Source: Ministeria vibrans ATCC 50519
Taxonomy: Eukaryota > Protista > Filasterea
Length of the DNA stretch: 35,441 nucleotides
NCBI GenBank assembly: GCA_943704425.1
Contig: CALSCP010001010.1
Location: 1-35,441, forward strand
Reading direction: 5' to 3'
Below the pieces are notes generated by a model, which made no database searches, was not told where the DNA came from, and saw only the letters and a list, made by a program, of their open reading frames with translations. Below are positions 15,815 to 35,232 of this stretch, one piece after another. Made by a program: the position numbers and the translations under genes. How positions within the stretch are numbered: the stretch's first letter is position 1; each line of letters begins with the position of its first letter.

Positions 15815-26565
<10,751 letters not shown>

Positions 26566-27163
26566 GGGAGAAGGGAGAGTAAAAGAGAGGAAGAGAGGAA
26601 GAGTTTTATGATTATGAATACATGAGAGACTAAGTTCACAGTTTAGTGAAGATCGGAAGGTGGAAGGACTCTCTTTGGGAGTTTCAACCTTGGTTTTGCA
26701 TAAAGCCGTTTCACATCACCTCTTTGATTACAAGCTCCGAACTTTGCTTGGTTTGCCTGGTTTGAAGATCGACCCTATTTAGTGTCTCTTCAATTGGACG
26801 GGGGTGGGTATTAGTGTACCTTGGAAGCGCAAGCTAGCCAAGCTTGAATACGCTACTCTTTGCATATCCAACATTGTATCACAACGGACAAGCAGCCAGA
26901 GCCCAGCTTGAGAGCTTTCTATTTCGCGTTTTCCCGCCATCCACATACGAAAGGGCGCTCACAGACAAACCTCACTCACTCAGCACTTAGCAGTGTCTAG
27001 TGAAACAAACAAACACTCGAGTGAGTCGACAGTCAGGCAGACGGCAGACAACCCGTGACCGGCCAGACCGGGTTTCTTATTTTCGCATCAAAAAATAATA
27101 TTAATCAAAAATCAAATTAATTATTCAATATTCATCAGAATATTTTTTTGTTTTGGTATTTTC

Positions 27164-28644
27164 ATGATTTTTGACGACGACAAAGTTGTAAGACTGGCGA
27201 ATGCCATGGTAAGGCGTCTGTCGTGTGTGCAGTACTCTCCCTTTGCGCTCCATGTGCACCCTGTCTGGTTGGACTGCTGTTGGCACCGCCGGCACCCGCA
27301 ACGGCGCCCGACGGCGTGTCTATGGGGCCATTTGGCTCTCGTTCAATCAAATCGTTCGGACATTTGCCGATCACCCCAAACCACTTTCTTGACTGAAATT
27401 TCCCATTCCATCCCTCGCATGCACGGCAATGTTTTGTCCTGGGTCGCATGGCGCTTTAGCCTGGCGGCTTTCATTTGAAGATGTGGAATGCGCCGCAGTT
27501 GGAATTTATTATTTTTAAAAAAACTAAAAAAATTTCGTCTCTTTTAGCACGAACAGTCAGACGAGGAGTCTGATGGCACTATTGCAGTGCATGGAACCCT
27601 ACAGACACTCTCCGAGTCAGTTTTCACACTGCCGGTGTTTGCCTCTTTGAAACATCTCGATTTGTCATCCAATCGTCTCACGTCGCTGCCCACCTCCATT
27701 GCACGACTCACGCAACTCATCACATTGAACCTTACTTCAAATGCTCTCGTAAGAAGTCATGATCATGAATCATTTTTTTTTCTTTTTGTGTGCTGATGAT
27801 TAGTATTGACTGTTTTTTTTTTCAGACGACCCTTCCCGACTCGCTGGATCAGTGTACCCAGCTGCACACACTGTTGCTATCAGGCAATCTTTTGGGTCCT
27901 CGATTGCCCGACGCCATCACACGGTTACGGCACCTCGAAGTGCTCAAGGTGGGCGCGAATCGACTGCGTGAGTTGCCGCACACCATTGGCCAGCTCACTC
28001 GACTGCGCACCCTCTATCTTGGTGGCAACCAGTTGGATGAGTTGCCGTCGCAAATGAGTTCCCTCGTTTGCTTGCGCCTTCTCTACCTGGGCGACAACCA
28101 GCTGACTCAGCTGCCGTCGCTGGTGACGCTCACCCAGCTGGTCACGCTCGACGTGCACGCCAACCAATTGCGTGCGCTTCCTGCCCACACCATGGACTTG
28201 CCACAGCTGCGCAATCTCAGCTTGCGTGAGAACCCTCTTGTACAGGCGTTTGCCGCCGAACAGGAGCAACAGCAGCAGCAGCGCGAGCCTCCCACATTGT
28301 TCGAACTTGCCGCACGCTCCGTCAAACGACTCCGACTTGACTACCACAATCGCGTCCCAGCGTCGCTTGGTGTACTCCTCGACCGCGCCCATCGCTGTGA
28401 CAACCCTGCTTGCAACGGCGTTTACTTTGACGAGGCGTCCGCTGTGCCTCACATCAAACTCGCCGATTTCTGCGGCAAATACCAAGTCCCCATGATGAGC
28501 TTCCTCTGTCGTCCCGACTGCTTTGCACGCGAACCCCAACCTCAACCCGCCGACAAACACCCCGAACCTAGTGAACGCGCCTTGCAACCTCGTCCTGACT
28601 TTGTCGCGCGCGTCCTTCTCCCAAGCGAACTTGTGCGCCAATAA
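27164..28644 (+). CDS. LRRC58: Leucine-rich repeat protein 58 orthologue (LRRs + BC box + Cys-rich C-terminus), ~354 aa; first exon tentative
   Basis: Exons 27164-27208 (tentative), 27548-27748, 27826-28644. LRRs with LYLGGN and LSLRENPLV, then PPTLFELAARSVK, CDNPACNGVYFD, IKLADFCGKYQVPMMSFLCRPDC and terminal RVLL. These are colinear with human LRRC58 as I recall it (LSLRGNPLV, PPTLLELAARTIK, CPNPKCGGVYFD, IKFVDFCGKYRLPLMHYLCSPEC, KVLLG). Confidence 0.93.
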
Positions 28645-28747
28645 CACCGACATGGCGCAACCAATCGAACACACTTTTATATTGCACTTCATTTCCCTCG
28701 CTCCTGCCTGCGCCTCCATTTTCCACCCCCGCCTCTCCTTTGCCTCT

Positions 28748-29857
28748 ATGGAACCTCTTGATCGTCTCGTTGCCGAGCTAAACGATGTGTTCTCGGCCGA
28801 AAGCTGTTGCGTCGAAGACTTCAAAGCGGCCGTCGCCGCGTACTCAAGCAGGCACGCTCTCTCTCTCTCTCATCACTCGCTCCTCCCCTGTCATATACAT
28901 CCCCCCTGTATACCTTGTACTGACCTATTCTACTCCACAATGCAACTTTTACACATCCTTTTTTTTTTTGGACTGTTTTTTTTTTCTGCTTCTTGCAGTG
29001 TCTCTCACACTTTCCACTCACACTTGCATTTAAACTCGTTCACAGCTCGACCGACTGGAAGCAGTACGCTCTTGCCGACGACTGTGGCGGCTACACGCGC
29101 AACTTCGTGTCGGATGGCGACAAAAACCTTTTCAACGTGTTGCTTCTCGTCTGGCCTGAAGGCGCCGCAAGGTACTGCCTCATTCCTCTCCTACGACTCT
29201 TCTTGTCCGCCCCAACACCCACCCATACACACACCTCTCTCTCTCTCTCTCGCAACTGCCCCTTCTACGCTTTTTTCCCCTTCTTTTTTCGTTTTGTGAA
29301 TATCAATTATTATTATTCAACCCATCCCACTTTTTATTTGTTTTTTTACAGCTCCATTCATGATCATGCCGGTAGCCACTGTTGTCTCAAAGTCTTGCAG
29401 GGCTCTCTTCAAGAGGTACCCTTTCCCACAATGACAATGACTTCTTGTGTCATTCATTACTCCTTTGCCCTCTCAGGTTCTGTACACGAATCCAAAGCAG
29501 ACGGACACGTTTGAAGAAGTAAAGCGCCACGACTTGCCCACCGACACCATTGGCTACATCAACGGTAAGGCACAGTGCGGAGATTTGCTGCTGCACAGTG
29601 GACATGCACTTGACTGACTGACCGACTTGTCATGGCACTCTATAGACACCATCGGCCTGCACCGTATGGTCAACACATCGCACACAACGCCAGCCGTCTC
29701 GCTTCACATCTACTCGCCACCCTTTCAGGCCGCGTGCACCTACGACTCCAACGGTGTGCGCCATCAGGGCTCTCCAATGACATTTTACTCGCGCAGCGGT
29801 CAACTCGTCGCGTACCATTTTGAAAAGACACCCGAATCATCACCCTTGCCCCAGTGA
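28748..29857 (+). CDS. CDO1: Cysteine dioxygenase type 1, 197 aa, five exons
   Basis: Exons 28748-28851, 29046-29171, 29352-29415, 29477-29564, 29646-29857 (594 nt). Motifs YTRN, LLVWPEG, SSIHDHAGSHC (two iron His ligands plus the cross-link Cys), YINDTIGLHRM (third His), PAVSLHIYSPPF (cross-link Tyr), MTFYS. Confidence 0.96.
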
Positions 29858-29869
29858 ACTAAAAAAACC

Positions 29870-30091
29870 NNNNNNNNNNNNNNNNNNNNNNNNNNNNNNN
29901 NNNNNNNNNNNNNNNNNNNNNNNNNNNNNNNNNNNNNNNNNNNNNNNNNNNNNNNNNNNNNNNNNNNNNNNNNNNNNNNNNNNNNNNNNNNNNNNNNNNN
30001 NNNNNNNNNNNNNNNNNNNNNNNNNNNNNNNNNNNNNNNNNNNNNNNNNNNNNNNNNNNNNNNNNNNNNNNNNNNNNNNNNNNNNNNNNNN
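29870..30091. other. Assembly gap (N run)
   Basis: Run of n immediately after the CDO stop; the CDO 3' UTR is not visible. Confidence 0.99.
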
Positions 30092-30193
30092 ATAATTTTG
30101 TGTGTTACCTATTAATTACCATTACTCAATTTGCTCTACAACACAACGACGAAACCGCAGAAGAGCCCCTACTGACCGACGCGCGCTGCGAGA

Positions 30194-33100
30194 ATGAACC
30201 ATCGACCAGGATCAAGGGGTGATGGCTCTATCGCCAGTGCAGCCCCGCGTCCGAGTGTGGCTGAGTTGCCCTTTTTACGCCTCAACTTTGCGCAGGTGAG
30301 AAAAAAAAATCTACAAGAGTCATTTGGAGGTCCGCATAGCGCCCCTTTCGCTTCTTCTGCCAGCGCATCCGTGCTATTTTCCTTGTGTGATGTGTGTGTG
30401 CGCGCCGCAATGCCCGCACCCATGCGCAGTGGCCTTCCACGCCGCAGGTGTGAAAAAAAAAGAAAGAAAGACGCTTGCCTCCCAAGATTCCTCAGTTCTC
30501 GGCCAAACATTGCACAAGCCGGGAGGCTCGGCGTAGCGGCACCATGGCGTGGTATATCGTCGTCTGAGTGGGAGTTGCGCCCCTCCCGTGTCGCGCGTGA
30601 TCTCTGGAATGTTGAAAAATGTCAAGCAACTGAGAGATAAAAAAAAAAAAGAAGAAAAAACAGAACGCGCCCGTTCCTGCTTCCCCTCCTCCTCCTCCTA
30701 CGCTGTACACGTGCTGACAGCTGCACATCTGCCTTGCCACAGGTCGGCGAGCAGTTCTCGGCACAGATTGAGGAGCTGCCCATGACAATTCTGCAGTCGT
30801 TCAATCTGGCGGCAGTGGCCATTTCCATGGCTCACCAGCAGAACTTCGCCGACTACGACCGTGTCGCTCTCGCCACGCTCCCGACTTCGAAGCGGTCCAT
30901 CACAGGCCTGACGTCGACCGCCTCCTTGGGAAACGTCTCCACATCAAGCGCCGACGGCGTCACAACCGACACCGAGAGCGATCTGGTGTCGTCGTCGTCG
31001 TCGTCCTTCACGTCGCTCGTCCCCTTGGCCGGCTCCTGTCTTGAATGGAGCATGAAGAACATCTGGCTCGTCATCTGTGCTGACTTTGCTCTCCTCCTCC
31101 AAGGAGATCCCCTCTCGTCTCCCAGTCTCACGCTGGTGGTGCAGGTAAGCACGAGAAGAACACAATAACCTTATCATAACTGTTATTATTTTTGGGGGTC
31201 TATTTTATATTGTTTACACAGTCCCTAAACTCTTATTAATTAATATTACATCACTGTCTTTAAAGATCTCATCCCATTTTGTTCTTGTTCATCATCATAA
31301 TTTAGCCACTCTTCTTGACGGGTCTCGTTGTGCTGCCGTCGGCGTCGCGCCGAACCCCTCGCCTGTTTCATCTGCGCTTTGGCGATCTGCTGATCACTTG
31401 CCACTGTGTGACCGAGACGGATGCAACCGAGGGAGTTGAGGCATTCCATACGGCATTCGCCTTGCAACACCATGCTTCCTGGTGCCGTCTGGTGCGTCCC
31501 TCTCGTTCCCTGCGCCAAATGGATCGTGTTTCCCTTGCGTCCCTCGAGAAATGGGAAGACTATGGCGCACCCGTCGCCGAAGCTGGTTCCCTCAGCCGTC
31601 AACGGTCTACCAGCTCACAACAAAGACAGCGCATCCGCAAGCAGTCCGATGTTCAGGAAGACAAGGCAGAAAGTGCCTCTACCCAGGCAGATGCTGCTTC
31701 AGCCGCAGCTTCGAGTGCACCGCCGCGACGCACGTCGAATCCCTCAAATCCTTCAACTTGTATGCTTCAGACGCGACACTCCGAACCGAGCGTGTCCATG
31801 GACGACGATGACCACGTCCGTCTCACCGCAACCCGCTCGCCCAAGGCCCNNNNNNNNNNNNNNNNNNNNNNNNNNNNNNNNNNNNNNNNNNNNNNNNNNN
31901 NNNNNNNNNNNNNNNNNNNNNNNNNNNNNNNNNNNNNNNNNNNNNNNNNNNNNNNNNNNNNNNNNNNNNNNNNNNNNNNNNNNNNNNNNNNNNNNNNNNN
32001 NNNNNNNNNNNNNNNNNNNNNNNNNNNNNNNNNNNNNNNNNNNNNNNNNNNNNNNNNNNNNNNNNNNNNNNNNNNNNNNNNNNNNNNNNNNNNNNNNNNN
32101 NNNNNNNNNNNNNNNNNNNNNNNNNNNNNGACCTCTGCCGCCCCTTCCTCTCCACTTTCCTCCACTTTCACACAACGCTCCGCTCGTGGCCGCCACCTCT
32201 CAAGCGTCTCCCTTACCAACACTATCACGGGCGCCTCAACGCCCCCATCTTCACCGAGTCCCCTTCGTAGTCCTTTCACCGTTCGCTCCGCCAAGTGTGC
32301 CTCAGTACAGTTCCCTGTTCGTCCCGATCCCCTCCTCCAGCGCTCCTCTGCTAGCCTCGTGCCCATTTCCATCGTAGACGCCTCTCCAGACACTCTCACC
32401 AATAGCACTCCGAGCATCTCCACTACCCTCACCACCTCAACCGCCACTGGCCTTCCGAGTTCTAGCACCATCCCTTCGGCTGCACTCGCCCAAAGCACCA
32501 ACACATTGCGCATGACACCCATTACTACCGTCACCGACACTACTACCACCACCACCATCTCATCTTCCTCCTCCGCTTTCTCCGCCACCTCCTCCACCTC
32601 GTCCGTTCACCAACAGCAGCAGCAGCAGCAACAACAACAACACAAACAGCGCATGCGCAGTCCCAGTATCTCCAGCGACGCCTCGTCGGGTCTCGTCTCG
32701 TCTACTCTCCTGCGTGCCACCAACCGCGTCCGTGGTGCCCTCTCTCGCATTGTCCGTCATTCCTCTCTCGACTTTCCGGATCACAACACGAGCTCTGTTG
32801 CTTCCGAACCCTCCAACGCCACCACCACGACGAGCACCATTGCCGGCAACTTAGGCTCCGCCTCGACCATCTTCACCGGCTCTACCGACTCCATTGACAC
32901 TCGTCGCACCAGCGGTAGCAGTACGTCCACTGAACGGCGCACCAACGGTAGTAGTGCTTCGATTGACACCAAGCGCACCAGCAACGCGTCTGTTGTCGAG
33001 GTGAAACGGTCTCGCAGCCTGAGCAACAGCGGCACAAGCGCACCGCTGCCCCCTCAAACGCTCTATGTGGCCGAAGCTGGTGTCGACACGCTTGTCGTGC

Positions 33101-35232
33101 AGCTGCCCGCCGTCGCCCTGCCCGCCTCCTTTGACGAAGATACTCACGTCGCCCTCGTGCCTGGCGGCTCCATTGGCGTTGTACTGGCCGGTCGTCGCGA
33201 CAAACTCGTCGAGCTGCTTGCCTCGGACGAAACGGTCAGCAGCGAGTATGTCACGACCATGTTGCTTGCACACGACTTCTTCATCAACAAACTCCTCTTC
33301 ATCGACATGCTTGTGTCGCGCTTCAGTATCACCCCTTTCAGCAACATCACCGCGGCCACGCTGCACTTTTTTCGTCAGTGGAAGCGCGTTATTCAGTTCA
33401 AGGTGATTGCCGTCATGCACGCTTGGGTCTCGTCCCACTGGCTTGACTTTGTGCGCAGTCGTCCTCTCCGAGAGCGCCTCGACGCTTTTGTCGCGCGTCT
33501 CAGTGCCATGGGCTTTATCGCTGCTCACAATGCCTTTCTCTCCCTCATTCGTGACGTTGAGTGGCGCTACGTCTGCTCAACGCTCAAGCTTAAAGCGCGC
33601 ATCAAGACCAACGCAGCCGGCACCATTGACGCCGCCCAGTCCATCTTGTTGCGCTCGCAGCCCCTTCCTCTCTCTACGTCCACGCCTACCTCTGAGCCCC
33701 GGCAACCCGTCTTGACTTCATCACCTGCTGCCTCCACGACCTCCGTCTCCGTCTCGTGCCGTGTCATGTCGTCGTTTGGCCCCGACTCTGTCCTCATGAG
33801 CGGCTGGTCCACCCTCGACATTGCCGAGCAGCTCACCCTTCTTGATCACGACCTCTTCTGTCTCATTCCCCCTCGCCAGTTCCTCGATCGCTTCATTGTT
33901 CATCGGTTGCACGGCGCCTCTCGCAACCACCACGACATGTCGCGCAGCAACAGCGACAGCGGTGACTCGAATGGCGACTCCACCACCCTCAACGGCAGTG
34001 GAAACTCAAGCAACGACGACAACCTCGCTCACAAGAACCAGGAGCAGGCTATCACCGATCCCGCCGTGTCCGCACTTGCGCTGTTCACGGCCCGCTTCGA
34101 CACCGAGTGCTATTGGGCGGCAACACAAGTCTGTGTGGCTGCGTCGCCACAACGATGTGCTGCGACCGTCGCTTTTCTCCTCGACATTGCCGATCGGGCG
34201 CTCGACCTGGGCAACTACTTTACGTCGGCCGCCATCCAAGTGGCGCTCCAGCTCACGCCTGTGCGCGAGCTGACCGCTGCTTGGGACCTCGTGCCCGCGC
34301 GTAGCCTTGCCATCCGTGATCGCCTCGACTCGCTCCTCTCGCACACGGGAAATATGCGCGCCTACCGTCGTGCCGTCAAGGACATCCCCGCTGGCACTCC
34401 TATCGTGCCCTTCTTGCCCCTCTACCTCAAGGACCTTGTGTTTATTAACGACGGCAACGCAGCTCTCATTGACGACTCGCTTGTTAACTTTGACCGTCTG
34501 CGCATGATGGCGGCGACCGTCGCGTCTCTCTCGCGTCACCAGACGACTCCATTCAACATTGCGTCACGTCTCGATGTCCAGTCGTGGATTTTCACCTCAG
34601 AGAGTGCCATCGTGCGCACCTCAGACATGCTCGACAGGGTCATCCGTACCGTCCGCAAGCACGCACACTCGTCTCGCCCGCAGTCTTTCACGCTCACCAA
34701 TGCACCCGGTCACGTGAGCAGCAGCAACCCGGCTGACTCGATTTCTCCGCCCCCGTCTCCGCTCAAACTCCAGTTGCGGCAGGAGCAAACCCCTCGTGGC
34801 ACCTCATTCGAACCCACGCAAGACCAGATACCCCGTAAAGCGCAGAATGTACAGCAAGGGAATGAGGACACCAGTGACAACGACAGAGGGCGCGCCAGTC
34901 GTCCTCGACATGCCTCACCACCACACGTTCAGCAGCATTCGCACCGCACTCGTTCGCGGTCTCCTATGCGAAGCAAAGCCTTGTCCGTCTCCCCGCCTCC
35001 GCGCCGCCAGCGCCACTCTCCGGCCGTTTCACCTCGAGGCAGTCCCATCCTGTCGCGTCGCGCAGCCTTTGCTCGTGTGCGCTCAGCAAGCGACTCGCTT
35101 GTCAAGCCCGTCATCATTCCCATTACATCTGCAGCCACAGCCGCAGCGCTCCTTTCCGCACGCAGTCCCGACTCTGCTACTACCACCGCCACTGCTCAGT
35201 CTCCTGCTAGTCTCCGCGTCACGACAGTATAA
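30194..35232 (+). CDS. Ras guanine-nucleotide exchange factor (PH-like N-terminus, Ser/Thr-rich linker, REM + CDC25 domains)
   Basis: Exons 30194-30295 (tentative), 30743-31144, 31306-35232 (contains an N gap, so frame across it is unverified). REM: LAGRRDKLVELL..EYVTTMLLAHDFF..LVSRF, KVIAVMHAWVSSHWLDF. CDC25: DIAEQLTLLDHDLF, LGNY, NMRAYR, PIVPFLPLYLKDLVFINDGN, VNFDRLR. Confidence 0.9.
31850..32129. other. Assembly gap (N run) inside the RasGEF low-complexity region
   Basis: Run of n. Confidence 0.99.

What the first reader, a model, noticed from the sequence alone, without database searches (positions are those of the whole stretch)
27164..29857. LRRC58 and its substrate cysteine dioxygenase form an adjacent, co-oriented two-gene module
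Seen in the sequence: an LRRC58 orthologue (stop 28644) is followed on the same strand, 103 bp later, by an intact CDO gene (ATG 28748). Established knowledge, from memory: mammalian LRRC58 was recently characterised as the Elongin B/C-cullin substrate receptor that ubiquitylates CDO1 under cysteine limitation, and the human genes are on different chromosomes. Inference: a degradation receptor placed next to its specific substrate in a probable unicellular animal relative suggests an operon-like cysteine-homeostasis cluster. It would also mean the cysteine-responsive LRRC58-CDO circuit predates animals. Functional clustering of an E3 receptor with its substrate is unusual in eukaryotes, and I know of no description of this linkage. 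A single genome cannot exclude chance adjacency.
Basis: partly seen in the sequence, partly recalled or inferred. Interest (0 to 1): 0.92.

Follow-up and report, generated by a model that had tools for sequence, protein, structure and literature searches.

The report
LRRC58 and cysteine dioxygenase gene tandem
In a small eukaryotic genome, the gene for the LRRC58 ubiquitin-ligase receptor sits 103 bases upstream of the gene for its known animal target, cysteine dioxygenase. Both are spliced and lie on continuous RNA contigs, but I found the pairing in no other genome, so it may be a lineage-specific or chance arrangement.

Summary
A 3-exon, 354-codon LRRC58-type gene (27164-28644, +) is followed after 103 bases by a 5-exon, 197-codon type I cysteine dioxygenase (CDO; 28748-29857, +). 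All six introns, including a GC-AG intron in CDO, are removed in contigs of public RNA-like runs. In three runs from three studies, contigs cross the spacer. One spliced 1546-base contig runs from LRRC58 exon 1 to CDO exon 4.

Both genes are single-copy in the 29.7 Mb assembly. The LRR protein's C-terminal domain matches one solved protein only, human LRRC58 (E 5.9e-21). It keeps the BC box, Cul2 box, conserved cysteines and C-cap tyrosine. It lacks the terminal -VLLG end, and CDO lacks Lys8 and about half of the mapped contact residues.

LRRC58 predates animals independently of this genome, because a choanoflagellate has it. Elongin C is present here.

No CDO lies in 323 kb flanking 85 other LRRC58 loci, and the pair is unlinked in C. 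elegans. The receptor-substrate relation and the pair's co-evolution are published; the adjacency is not, in the library searched. Whether one RNA molecule carries both reading frames is unresolved, and chance adjacency is not excluded. Other first-stage notes on this window cover the same stretch.

The parts
27164..27208 (+). LRRC58-type gene, exon 1 (15 codons, from the ATG)
   Evidence: The joint 27208|27548 (GT..AG) is present in contigs of X8 and X14. The 5' end of the mRNA was not determined.
27548..27748 (+). LRRC58-type gene, exon 2 (acidic N-terminal stretch and the first leucine-rich repeats)
   Evidence: Pfam LRR_8 and LRR_4 match. Joints on both sides appear in X13, X8 and X14.
27826..28644 (+). 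LRRC58-type gene, exon 3 (272 codons plus TAA): leucine-rich repeats, then the LRRC58-specific C-terminal domain
   Evidence: Diadema LRRC58-like protein matches at E 1e-51. Human LRRC58 (9t7v_B) matches in a single stretch, query 9-234 to chain 118-337.
28294..28380 (+). BC box (T-L-x-x-x-A-x-x-x-V, 28294-28323) and Cul2-box-like motif (V-P-x-x-L-x-x-x-L, 28354-28380)
   Evidence: Aligned residue by residue to human LRRC58 residues 259-290. The role of these boxes is described in PMC13156300.
28396..28521 (+). Cysteine-rich zinc-loop region and C-cap (D-F-C-G-K-Y at 28465-28482)
   Evidence: Five cysteines and D-F-C-G are invariant in alignment A1. Tyr322 of human LRRC58 aligns to Tyr here.
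28609..28641 (+). R-V-L-L motif followed by seven more residues, so it is not at the C-terminus
   Evidence: Alignment A1. Animal proteins end in -VLLG. That terminal motif is needed for cysteine-dependent instability in human cells (bioRxiv 10.1101/2025.09.23.678073).
28645..28747 (+). 103-base spacer, 72% pyrimidine on the + strand; an ATG at 28652, 7 bases after the stop, is in frame with the CDO start
   Evidence: Sequence. The spacer is covered without a break by X13 record 2, X8 record 22 and X14 record 7.
28748..28851 (+). CDO exon 1
   Evidence: The joint to 29046 is present in X8 and X14 contigs. The intron 28852-29045 has GC..AG ends.
29046..29171 (+). CDO exon 2 (Tyr58, Arg60)
   Evidence: Pfam CDO_I. 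Aligned to human CDO1 residues 45-80.
29352..29415 (+). CDO exon 3 (His86, His88, Cys93)
   Evidence: Pfam CDO_I. Aligned to CDO1 residues 84-104.
29477..29564 (+). CDO exon 4
   Evidence: Joints on both sides are present in RNA-like contigs.
29646..29857 (+). CDO exon 5 (His140, Ser153, His155, Tyr157, and the stop codon)
   Evidence: Pfam CDO_I at E 4e-10. Aligned to CDO1 residues 137-187 at E 3e-11.

Best explanation
These are the organism's single LRRC58 orthologue and its single type I cysteine dioxygenase, placed head to tail.

Shown:
- Both genes are spliced and expressed.
- RNA-derived contigs run without a break from one gene into the other.

Inferred:
- As in mammals and C. elegans, the LRR protein uses its BC box and Cul2 box to dock on Elongin B/C and a cullin. 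Its last repeats and C-cap hold CDO for ubiquitylation, so CDO falls when cysteine is scarce.
- The tight spacing puts the two genes under shared or overlapping transcription. They are therefore made together, and CDO abundance is set mainly after translation.
- The adjacency itself is most likely a lineage-specific arrangement in a compact genome, not an ancient conserved cluster.
- The cysteine-sensing step may differ from the human one, because the C-terminal -VLLG end and CDO Lys8 are absent.
For: - Gene models and expression: six spliced joints are seen. X8 record 22 (1546 bases) covers LRRC58 exons 1-3, the spacer and CDO exons 1-4. X13 record 2 and X14 record 7 also cross the spacer. 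In contrast, RNA contigs stop at about 26645, roughly 80 bases past the upstream gene's stop codon. X8 depth falls to 0.65 in 26980-27095, just before LRRC58.
- LRRC58 identity: the C-terminal 143 residues match only human LRRC58 in the PDB, at E 5.9e-21. The BC box, Cul2 box, five cysteines, D-F-C-G-K-Y and R-V-L-L are conserved across the family. A quick tree places the protein inside LRRC58, grouped with a sponge-like and a choanoflagellate sequence (SH-aLRT 95).
- CDO identity: the residues that align to His86, His88, His140, Cys93, Tyr157 and Arg60 of mammalian CDO1 are all present.
- Contact residues kept: CDO Arg141, His147 and Asp168; LRRC58 Arg243 and Tyr322; and Tyr172 by alignment offsets (residue list from PMC13156300).
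- Machinery: Elongin C is encoded on contig C1486.
- Copy number: both genes are single-copy.
- Published function: PMC12589099, PMC13156300, PMC13158863.
Against: - Contigs cannot show that one RNA molecule carries both reading frames. Rare read-through or overlapping untranslated regions would give the same contigs.
- Several mapped contacts are changed: CDO Glu143 to Val, Arg170 to Asn, His173 to Arg, Gln55-Tyr56-Arg57 to Asp-Cys-Gly-Gly, and LRRC58 Glu238 to Arg. The ubiquitylated Lys8 has no counterpart.
- The terminal -VLLG needed for cysteine-dependent turnover in human cells is not terminal here.
- No CDO lies beside any other LRRC58 locus examined.
- Binding was not modelled or measured.
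Confidence: 0.6

Rival explanations
1. Chance neighbours. The two genes are true orthologues, but they ended up side by side through ordinary rearrangement in a compact genome. The continuous RNA contigs reflect overlapping untranslated regions or low-level read-through, and the adjacency has no regulatory meaning.
For: - The adjacency is seen in one genome only. It is absent from 323 kb of flanks of 85 other LRRC58 loci.
- No gene at all lies within 10 kb in a sea urchin.
- The pair is on chromosomes III and X in C. elegans.
- The pair was noticed after the fact among thousands of neighbour pairs.
- Logan contigs join any overlapping k-mers.
Against: - For two single-copy genes the prior chance of adjacency is about 2 in 10,000.
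- The 103-base spacing is much tighter than the neighbouring gaps in this window: 599 bases upstream and more than 870 downstream.
- The pair are reported as each other's top co-evolving partners (PMC12589099).
Confidence: 0.3
2. True dicistronic unit. One mature mRNA carries both reading frames. CDO is translated by reinitiation, leaky scanning or internal entry, perhaps from the ATG at 28652 seven bases after the LRRC58 stop, which fixes the ratio of receptor to substrate.
For: - One spliced contig spans both genes (X8 record 22).
- There is no break across the spacer in three runs.
- An in-frame ATG lies at 28652, with no stop before 28748.
- 103 bases leave little room for a poly(A) site plus a promoter.
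Against: - Contigs do not prove single molecules.
- Reinitiation after a 354-codon reading frame is inefficient in eukaryotes (established knowledge).
- The pyrimidine-rich spacer looks like an untranslated leader or promoter, and the 32 added residues have no counterpart in other CDOs. The window's Met1 aligns near human residue 9.
- X13 and X14 hold a form that reads into CDO intron 1 and ends near 28933-28954. That form could be the LRRC58 3' untranslated region.
Confidence: 0.15
3. Diverged receptor. The LRR protein is an LRRC58 family member but no longer recognises CDO in this lineage, or never did, and serves another substrate.
For: About half of the mapped contact residues differ on both partners, Lys8 is absent and the -VLLG end is not terminal.
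Against: - The central contacts are kept: Arg141, His147 and Asp168 on CDO; Arg243, Tyr322 and the Tyr of the L-Y-L-G-G-N repeat on LRRC58.
- The function is conserved from nematode to human (PMC13158863, PMC12589099).
- The Glu238 to Arg change pairs with the loss of its partner Arg57, which could be compensatory. This is inference.
Confidence: 0.2

Closest known systems
Human and mouse CRL2/CRL5-LRRC58 with its substrate CDO1 (PDB 9T7V; PMC12589099, PMC13156300, bioRxiv 10.1101/2025.09.23.678073)
   Same: - About nine leucine-rich repeats, BC box, Cul2 box, zinc-loop cysteines and a C-cap with the D-F-C-G-K-Y tyrosine.
- CDO has the three-histidine iron site and the Cys93-Tyr157 pair.
- CDO Arg141, His147 and Asp168 and LRRC58 Arg243, Tyr322 and Tyr172 are kept.
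   Different: - The genes are adjacent and lie on continuous RNA here. From memory, they are on different chromosomes in human.
- V-L-L is followed by seven residues instead of a terminal Gly.
- Position 297 is Asp, not Pro, and the Cys308-Cys309 pair is absent.
- CDO lacks Lys8 and differs at Glu143, Arg170, His173 and Gln55-Arg57.
C. elegans lrr-2 / cdo-1 (PMC13158863)
   Same: An LRRC58 homologue lowers CDO protein after translation and is part of sulfur amino acid homeostasis.
   Different: lrr-2 is on chromosome III and cdo-1 on X, so the genes are unlinked. No function has been tested for the window's pair.
Choanoflagellate LRRC58-like protein (Salpingoeca kvevrii, EukProt EP00050, P0007)
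   Same: A non-animal LRRC58 with the same C-terminal domain and a V-L-L motif that is not at the very end. It groups with the window protein in the quick tree.
   Different: It is known only from a transcript too short to hold a CDO, so its gene neighbourhood is unknown.
Eukaryotic operons and dicistronic genes (nematodes, tunicates, some insects and fungi; from general knowledge)
   Same: Two co-oriented genes with a very short spacer and continuous RNA coverage.
   Different: No spliced-leader or single-molecule evidence here, and no sign that such units are common in this genome.

Membership tests
LRRC58 (Elongin B/C-cullin substrate receptor) | N-terminal array of about nine leucine-rich repeats | tested here: met
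   Pfam LRR_8, LRR_4 and LRR_1 match on exons 2 and 3. Eight clear repeats plus a cap can be read from the sequence. The AlphaFold model has pLDDT above 90 over residues 11-130 of exon 3 and 88 over the first ten.
LRRC58 (Elongin B/C-cullin substrate receptor) | BC box and Cul2 box directly after the last repeat | tested here: met
   T-L-F-E-L-A-A-R-S-V and V-P-A-S-L-G-V-L-L align to human residues 261-270 and 282-290. Helices are predicted at residues 158-168 and 179-187.
LRRC58 (Elongin B/C-cullin substrate receptor) | Cysteine-rich zinc loop and C-cap (V-D-F-C-G-K-Y-R-L, Tyr322) | tested here: met
   Five invariant cysteines and D-F-C-G in A1. Tyr322 aligns to Tyr. This domain matches no other PDB protein.
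LRRC58 (Elongin B/C-cullin substrate receptor) | Terminal -VLLG motif, needed for cysteine-dependent instability in human cells | tested here: not met
   R-V-L-L is present but is followed by P-S-E-L-V-R-Q. The choanoflagellate protein and P0010 are also extended.
LRRC58 (Elongin B/C-cullin substrate receptor) | Falls within the LRRC58 clade and not with other LRR families | tested here: met
   Quick maximum-likelihood tree with LRRC39, RSU1 and SHOC2-like outgroups. The window branch is long (2.91) and the careful search did not finish, so placement within the family is unsure.
LRRC58 (Elongin B/C-cullin substrate receptor) | Binds CDO and Elongin B/C | not tested
   CDO is split into five exons, and a joined model could not be given by reference, so no complex was predicted. 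Elongin C is present in the genome.
Cysteine dioxygenase type I (PF05995) | Cupin with an iron site of three histidines (His86, His88, His140) | tested here: met
   Alignments to CDO1 structures. Three exons score above the Pfam cut-off.
Cysteine dioxygenase type I (PF05995) | Eukaryote-type Cys93-Tyr157 cross-link pair, plus Arg60, Tyr58, Ser153 and His155 | tested here: met
   All are present at the aligned positions.
Cysteine dioxygenase type I (PF05995) | LRRC58-contact patches 1-4 and Lys8 of the mammalian enzyme | tested here: inconclusive
   Kept: Arg141, His147, Asp168. Changed: Glu143, Gln169, Arg170, His173, Gln55, Tyr56, Arg57. There is no counterpart of Lys8 (residue list).
Operon-like or dicistronic transcription unit | Single RNA molecules carrying both reading frames | tested here: inconclusive
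   Contigs bridge the two genes in three runs, but contigs merge overlapping transcripts.
Conserved functional gene cluster | The same adjacency in independent lineages | tested here: not met
   No CDO signature in the flanks of 85 other LRRC58 loci, with a positive control in the window. All of these loci are 50% identical or less to the window protein. The assembled genomes of unicellular animal relatives could not be reached.

The most novel reading that the evidence does not exclude
The pair is a genuine two-gene transcription unit, kept together by selection. A ubiquitin-ligase receptor and its one metabolic substrate are then made in a fixed ratio from one RNA, and the enzyme level is set purely by cysteine-controlled receptor stability. 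That would be a eukaryotic operon-like homeostat predating animals.
Probability: 0.15. Interest if true: 0.75.

Novelty: new member of a known kind. Interest (0 to 1): 0.42.

Why it matters
The LRRC58-CDO1 axis was discovered only in 2025 and has been studied in mammals and one nematode. This locus shows an intact, expressed pair in a small, probably non-animal genome.

It adds gene-neighbourhood evidence to the published co-evolution signal. It also offers a natural variant that lacks the terminal -VLLG motif and Lys8, which could help show which features are essential for cysteine sensing.

If the two genes prove to be co-transcribed on single molecules, it would be a rare case of an E3 receptor physically coupled to its substrate gene in a eukaryote. 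As it stands, the adjacency is a single-genome observation.

Tried and rejected
- The search of protein representatives with the whole exon 3 was a wasted job. All 150 listed hits are giant multi-repeat LRR proteins. The C-terminal domain alone should have been used.
- The search for homologous proteins restricted to residues 130-272 returned only four proteins.
- Foldseek of the AlphaFold model against the PDB found only generic LRR folds over about 140 residues. The library stops at 2026-04-08 and apparently predates the release of 9T7V.
- Complex prediction was not run. CDO is in five exons, the largest 70 residues, and a joined model cannot be passed by reference. A fragment would not fold.
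- The joined coding sequences were used only inside one script, to count codons and stops. They were never sent to a search or fold tool.
- Fusion protein: rejected. The TAA is present in the RNA contigs, the two frames differ, and no joint bypasses the stop.
- Assembly artefact: rejected.
- Larger sulfur-metabolism cluster: rejected. The neighbours are a giant gene of unknown function, annotated as a DUF-domain helicase-like gene by an earlier first-stage note, and a RasGEF.
- Organism identity could not be established. Run names are coded and no named search remained.
Full report
**What is in the sequence**

The window is eukaryotic, with short GT-AG introns. On the + strand, an LRR gene has three exons (27164-27208, 27548-27748, 27826-28644) and ends in TAA at 28642-28644. 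After 103 bases, a cysteine dioxygenase (CDO) gene starts at the ATG at 28748. It has five exons (28748-28851, 29046-29171, 29352-29415, 29477-29564, 29646-29857).

An in-script check of the spliced frames gave 354 and 197 codons with no internal stop. That check was the only use made of the joined models.

**Support from reads**

The stretch is held by 20 public runs from 10 studies. I laid the contigs of four runs on 26400-29870.

- All six introns appear as joints. This includes the CDO first intron (28852-29045), which has GC..AG ends.
- X8 record 22 is a single 1546-base spliced contig. It runs from LRRC58 exon 1 through exons 2 and 3, the spacer and CDO exon 1, and on into CDO exons 2 to 4.
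- X13 record 2 (27556-28933) and X14 record 7 (28309-28851) also cross the spacer.
- Upstream the picture differs. RNA contigs stop at about 26645, roughly 80 bases past the giant upstream gene's stop codon at 26565. X8 depth then falls to 0.65 in 26980-27095, just before LRRC58. Not every pair of neighbours here is bridged.
- X13 and X14 also hold a form that reads from CDO exon 1 into its first intron and ends near 28933-28954. This could be unspliced RNA or the LRRC58 3' untranslated region.

Contigs merge overlapping transcripts. These data therefore show expression, splicing and continuity, but not that one molecule carries both reading frames.

**Identity of the LRR gene**

- Exon 3 (272 residues) best matches proteins named LRRC58. 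A sea urchin protein scores E 1e-51 at 46% identity over 83% of the query. A profile of nine family members retrieves over a thousand proteins, and the named ones are almost all LRRC58 from animals.
- Alignment A1 shows the family signature after the last repeat. It has a BC box, a Cul2-box-like motif, five invariant cysteines, D-F-C-G-K-Y and R-V-L-L.
- The C-terminal 143 residues match one PDB sequence only. That is human LRRC58, chain B of the CDO1-LRRC58-CUL5 cryo-EM structure 9T7V, at E 5.9e-21.
- A quick maximum-likelihood tree with three other LRR families as outgroup places the window protein inside LRRC58. It groups (SH-aLRT 95) with a sponge-like sequence, Salpingoeca kvevrii and an unnamed NCBI protein. 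Its branch is long and the careful search did not finish, so only family membership should be read from the tree.
- An AlphaFold model is confident over the repeats and the BC and Cul-box helices, with mean pLDDT 81.

**Identity of the CDO gene**

Three exons score above the Pfam CDO_I cut-off. All exon matches in the PDB at E below 0.1 are cysteine dioxygenase type 1; exon 3 also has weak hits (E 0.37-0.59) to 2-aminoethanethiol dioxygenase. The aligned positions show His86, His88, His140, Cys93, Tyr157, Tyr58, Arg60, Ser153 and His155. This is an intact eukaryote-type enzyme.

**Copy number and machinery**

The assembly is 29.7 Mb in 2860 pieces. CDO_I matches only this locus. Only this locus matches the LRRC58 C-terminal domain. 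Elongin C is encoded on another contig.

DHFR and thymidylate synthase lie on separate contigs and are therefore not fused. This fits opisthokonts and Amoebozoa, not most other eukaryote groups (the marker itself is from general knowledge). The organism's name is hidden, so I cannot say it is a unicellular animal relative, only that this is plausible.

**Would the two proteins interact?**

The published structure and mutagenesis list the contacts.

| Partner | Kept here | Changed or missing here |
|---|---|---|
| CDO | Arg141, His147, Asp168 | Glu143 to Val; Gln169 to Ser; Arg170 to Asn; His173 to Arg; Gln55-Tyr56-Arg57 to Asp-Cys-Gly-Gly; no counterpart of the ubiquitylated Lys8 |
| LRRC58 | Arg243, Tyr322, and Tyr172 (by alignment offsets) | Glu238 to Arg |

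Residues needed for cysteine-dependent instability in human cells give a mixed picture. Asn298, Asp317, Phe318, Cys319, Tyr322 and Leu330 are kept. Tyr329 is Phe and Pro297 is Asp. Position 297 varies in invertebrates too. The terminal -VLLG is not terminal here, because V-L-L is followed by seven residues. The choanoflagellate protein is extended in the same way.

Recognition is therefore plausible but unproven, and the sensing step may differ from the human one.

**Is the adjacency conserved?**

- A degenerate-pattern scan of JGI metagenome contigs returned 80 LRRC58 loci. I added five more places from look-ups.
- tblastn with the five CDO exon peptides and three CDO motif patterns found nothing in 323 kb of flanks. 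Thirty-five loci had 1.5 kb or more downstream and 18 had as much upstream. The window itself scored on all three motifs.
- All of these loci are 50% identical or less to the window protein. Many are animal or are mRNA contigs, so this is a weak negative.
- In C. elegans the two genes are on chromosomes III and X.
- The window's other neighbours are a giant gene of unknown function and a RasGEF. The 'cluster' is two genes.

**What is already known**

The receptor-substrate relation, the cullin usage and the structure are published. The fact that Cdo1 and Lrrc58 are each other's top co-evolving partners, and the nematode homologue's function, are published too. Those texts do not mention synteny. 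No paper in the library combines LRRC58 with synteny, choanoflagellates, Capsaspora, bicistronic transcripts or gene clusters.

**Verdict**

- The orthology is supported.
- The pre-animal age of LRRC58 is supported independently by a choanoflagellate protein.
- The claim of a functional, operon-like cluster rests on one genome plus contig continuity.
- The most likely reading is a conserved receptor-substrate pair that happens, in this lineage, to be packed head to tail with shared or overlapping transcription.
- Chance adjacency remains a serious rival, and a true dicistronic unit is the more novel but less likely reading.

Noticed in passing
window 28852-29045: The first CDO intron has GC..AG ends and is removed in RNA-like contigs of two runs. 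The other five introns of the two genes are GT..AG.
   Followed up: yes
window 28652-28747: An ATG seven bases after the LRRC58 stop is in frame with the CDO start, with no stop between. It would add 32 mostly hydrophobic residues without a lysine. The spacer is 72% pyrimidine and looks more like a leader sequence.
   Followed up: partly
window 29858-30092: RNA contigs of three runs continue past 29869 into sequence that the assembly replaces with a run of N (29871-30092). The CDO 3' untranslated region therefore lies in an assembly gap (loose ends).
   Followed up: no
window 27100-29870 (runs X7-X19): Near-identical sequence (99% or more) is held by runs filed under five other organism labels and by 'algae metagenome' runs. 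The organism seems to be a frequent companion or contaminant of other cultures, or to be filed under several names.
   Followed up: no
ESM Atlas hit for window 28213-28641: A 58-member cluster automatically named 'Leucine-rich repeat-containing protein 58' has Mucoromycota as its commonest phylum (score 0.79, a lead only). If real, LRRC58 would reach into fungi.
   Followed up: no
L039:105-1148 and L043:223-1266: Two metatranscriptome LRRC58 proteins end in A-L-L-P-D-x-V instead of -VLLG, like the window's non-terminal V-L-L-P. Their mRNAs are AT-rich and look monocistronic.
   Followed up: partly
P0094: The Branchiostoma lanceolatum protein named LRRC58 is 629 residues, about 260 longer than its relatives, with no extra Pfam domain listed.
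   Followed up: no
G000 contigs C2542, C761, C1168: DHFR and thymidylate synthase matches lie on different contigs, so they are not fused. The thymidylate synthase first exon sits in a 372-residue open frame with about 200 unexplained residues.
   Followed up: partly
window 18337-26565 and 31315-35232: A 2742-codon single-exon reading frame lies upstream of the pair and a 1305-codon RasGEF reading frame lies downstream. Neither is related to sulfur metabolism.
   Followed up: partly
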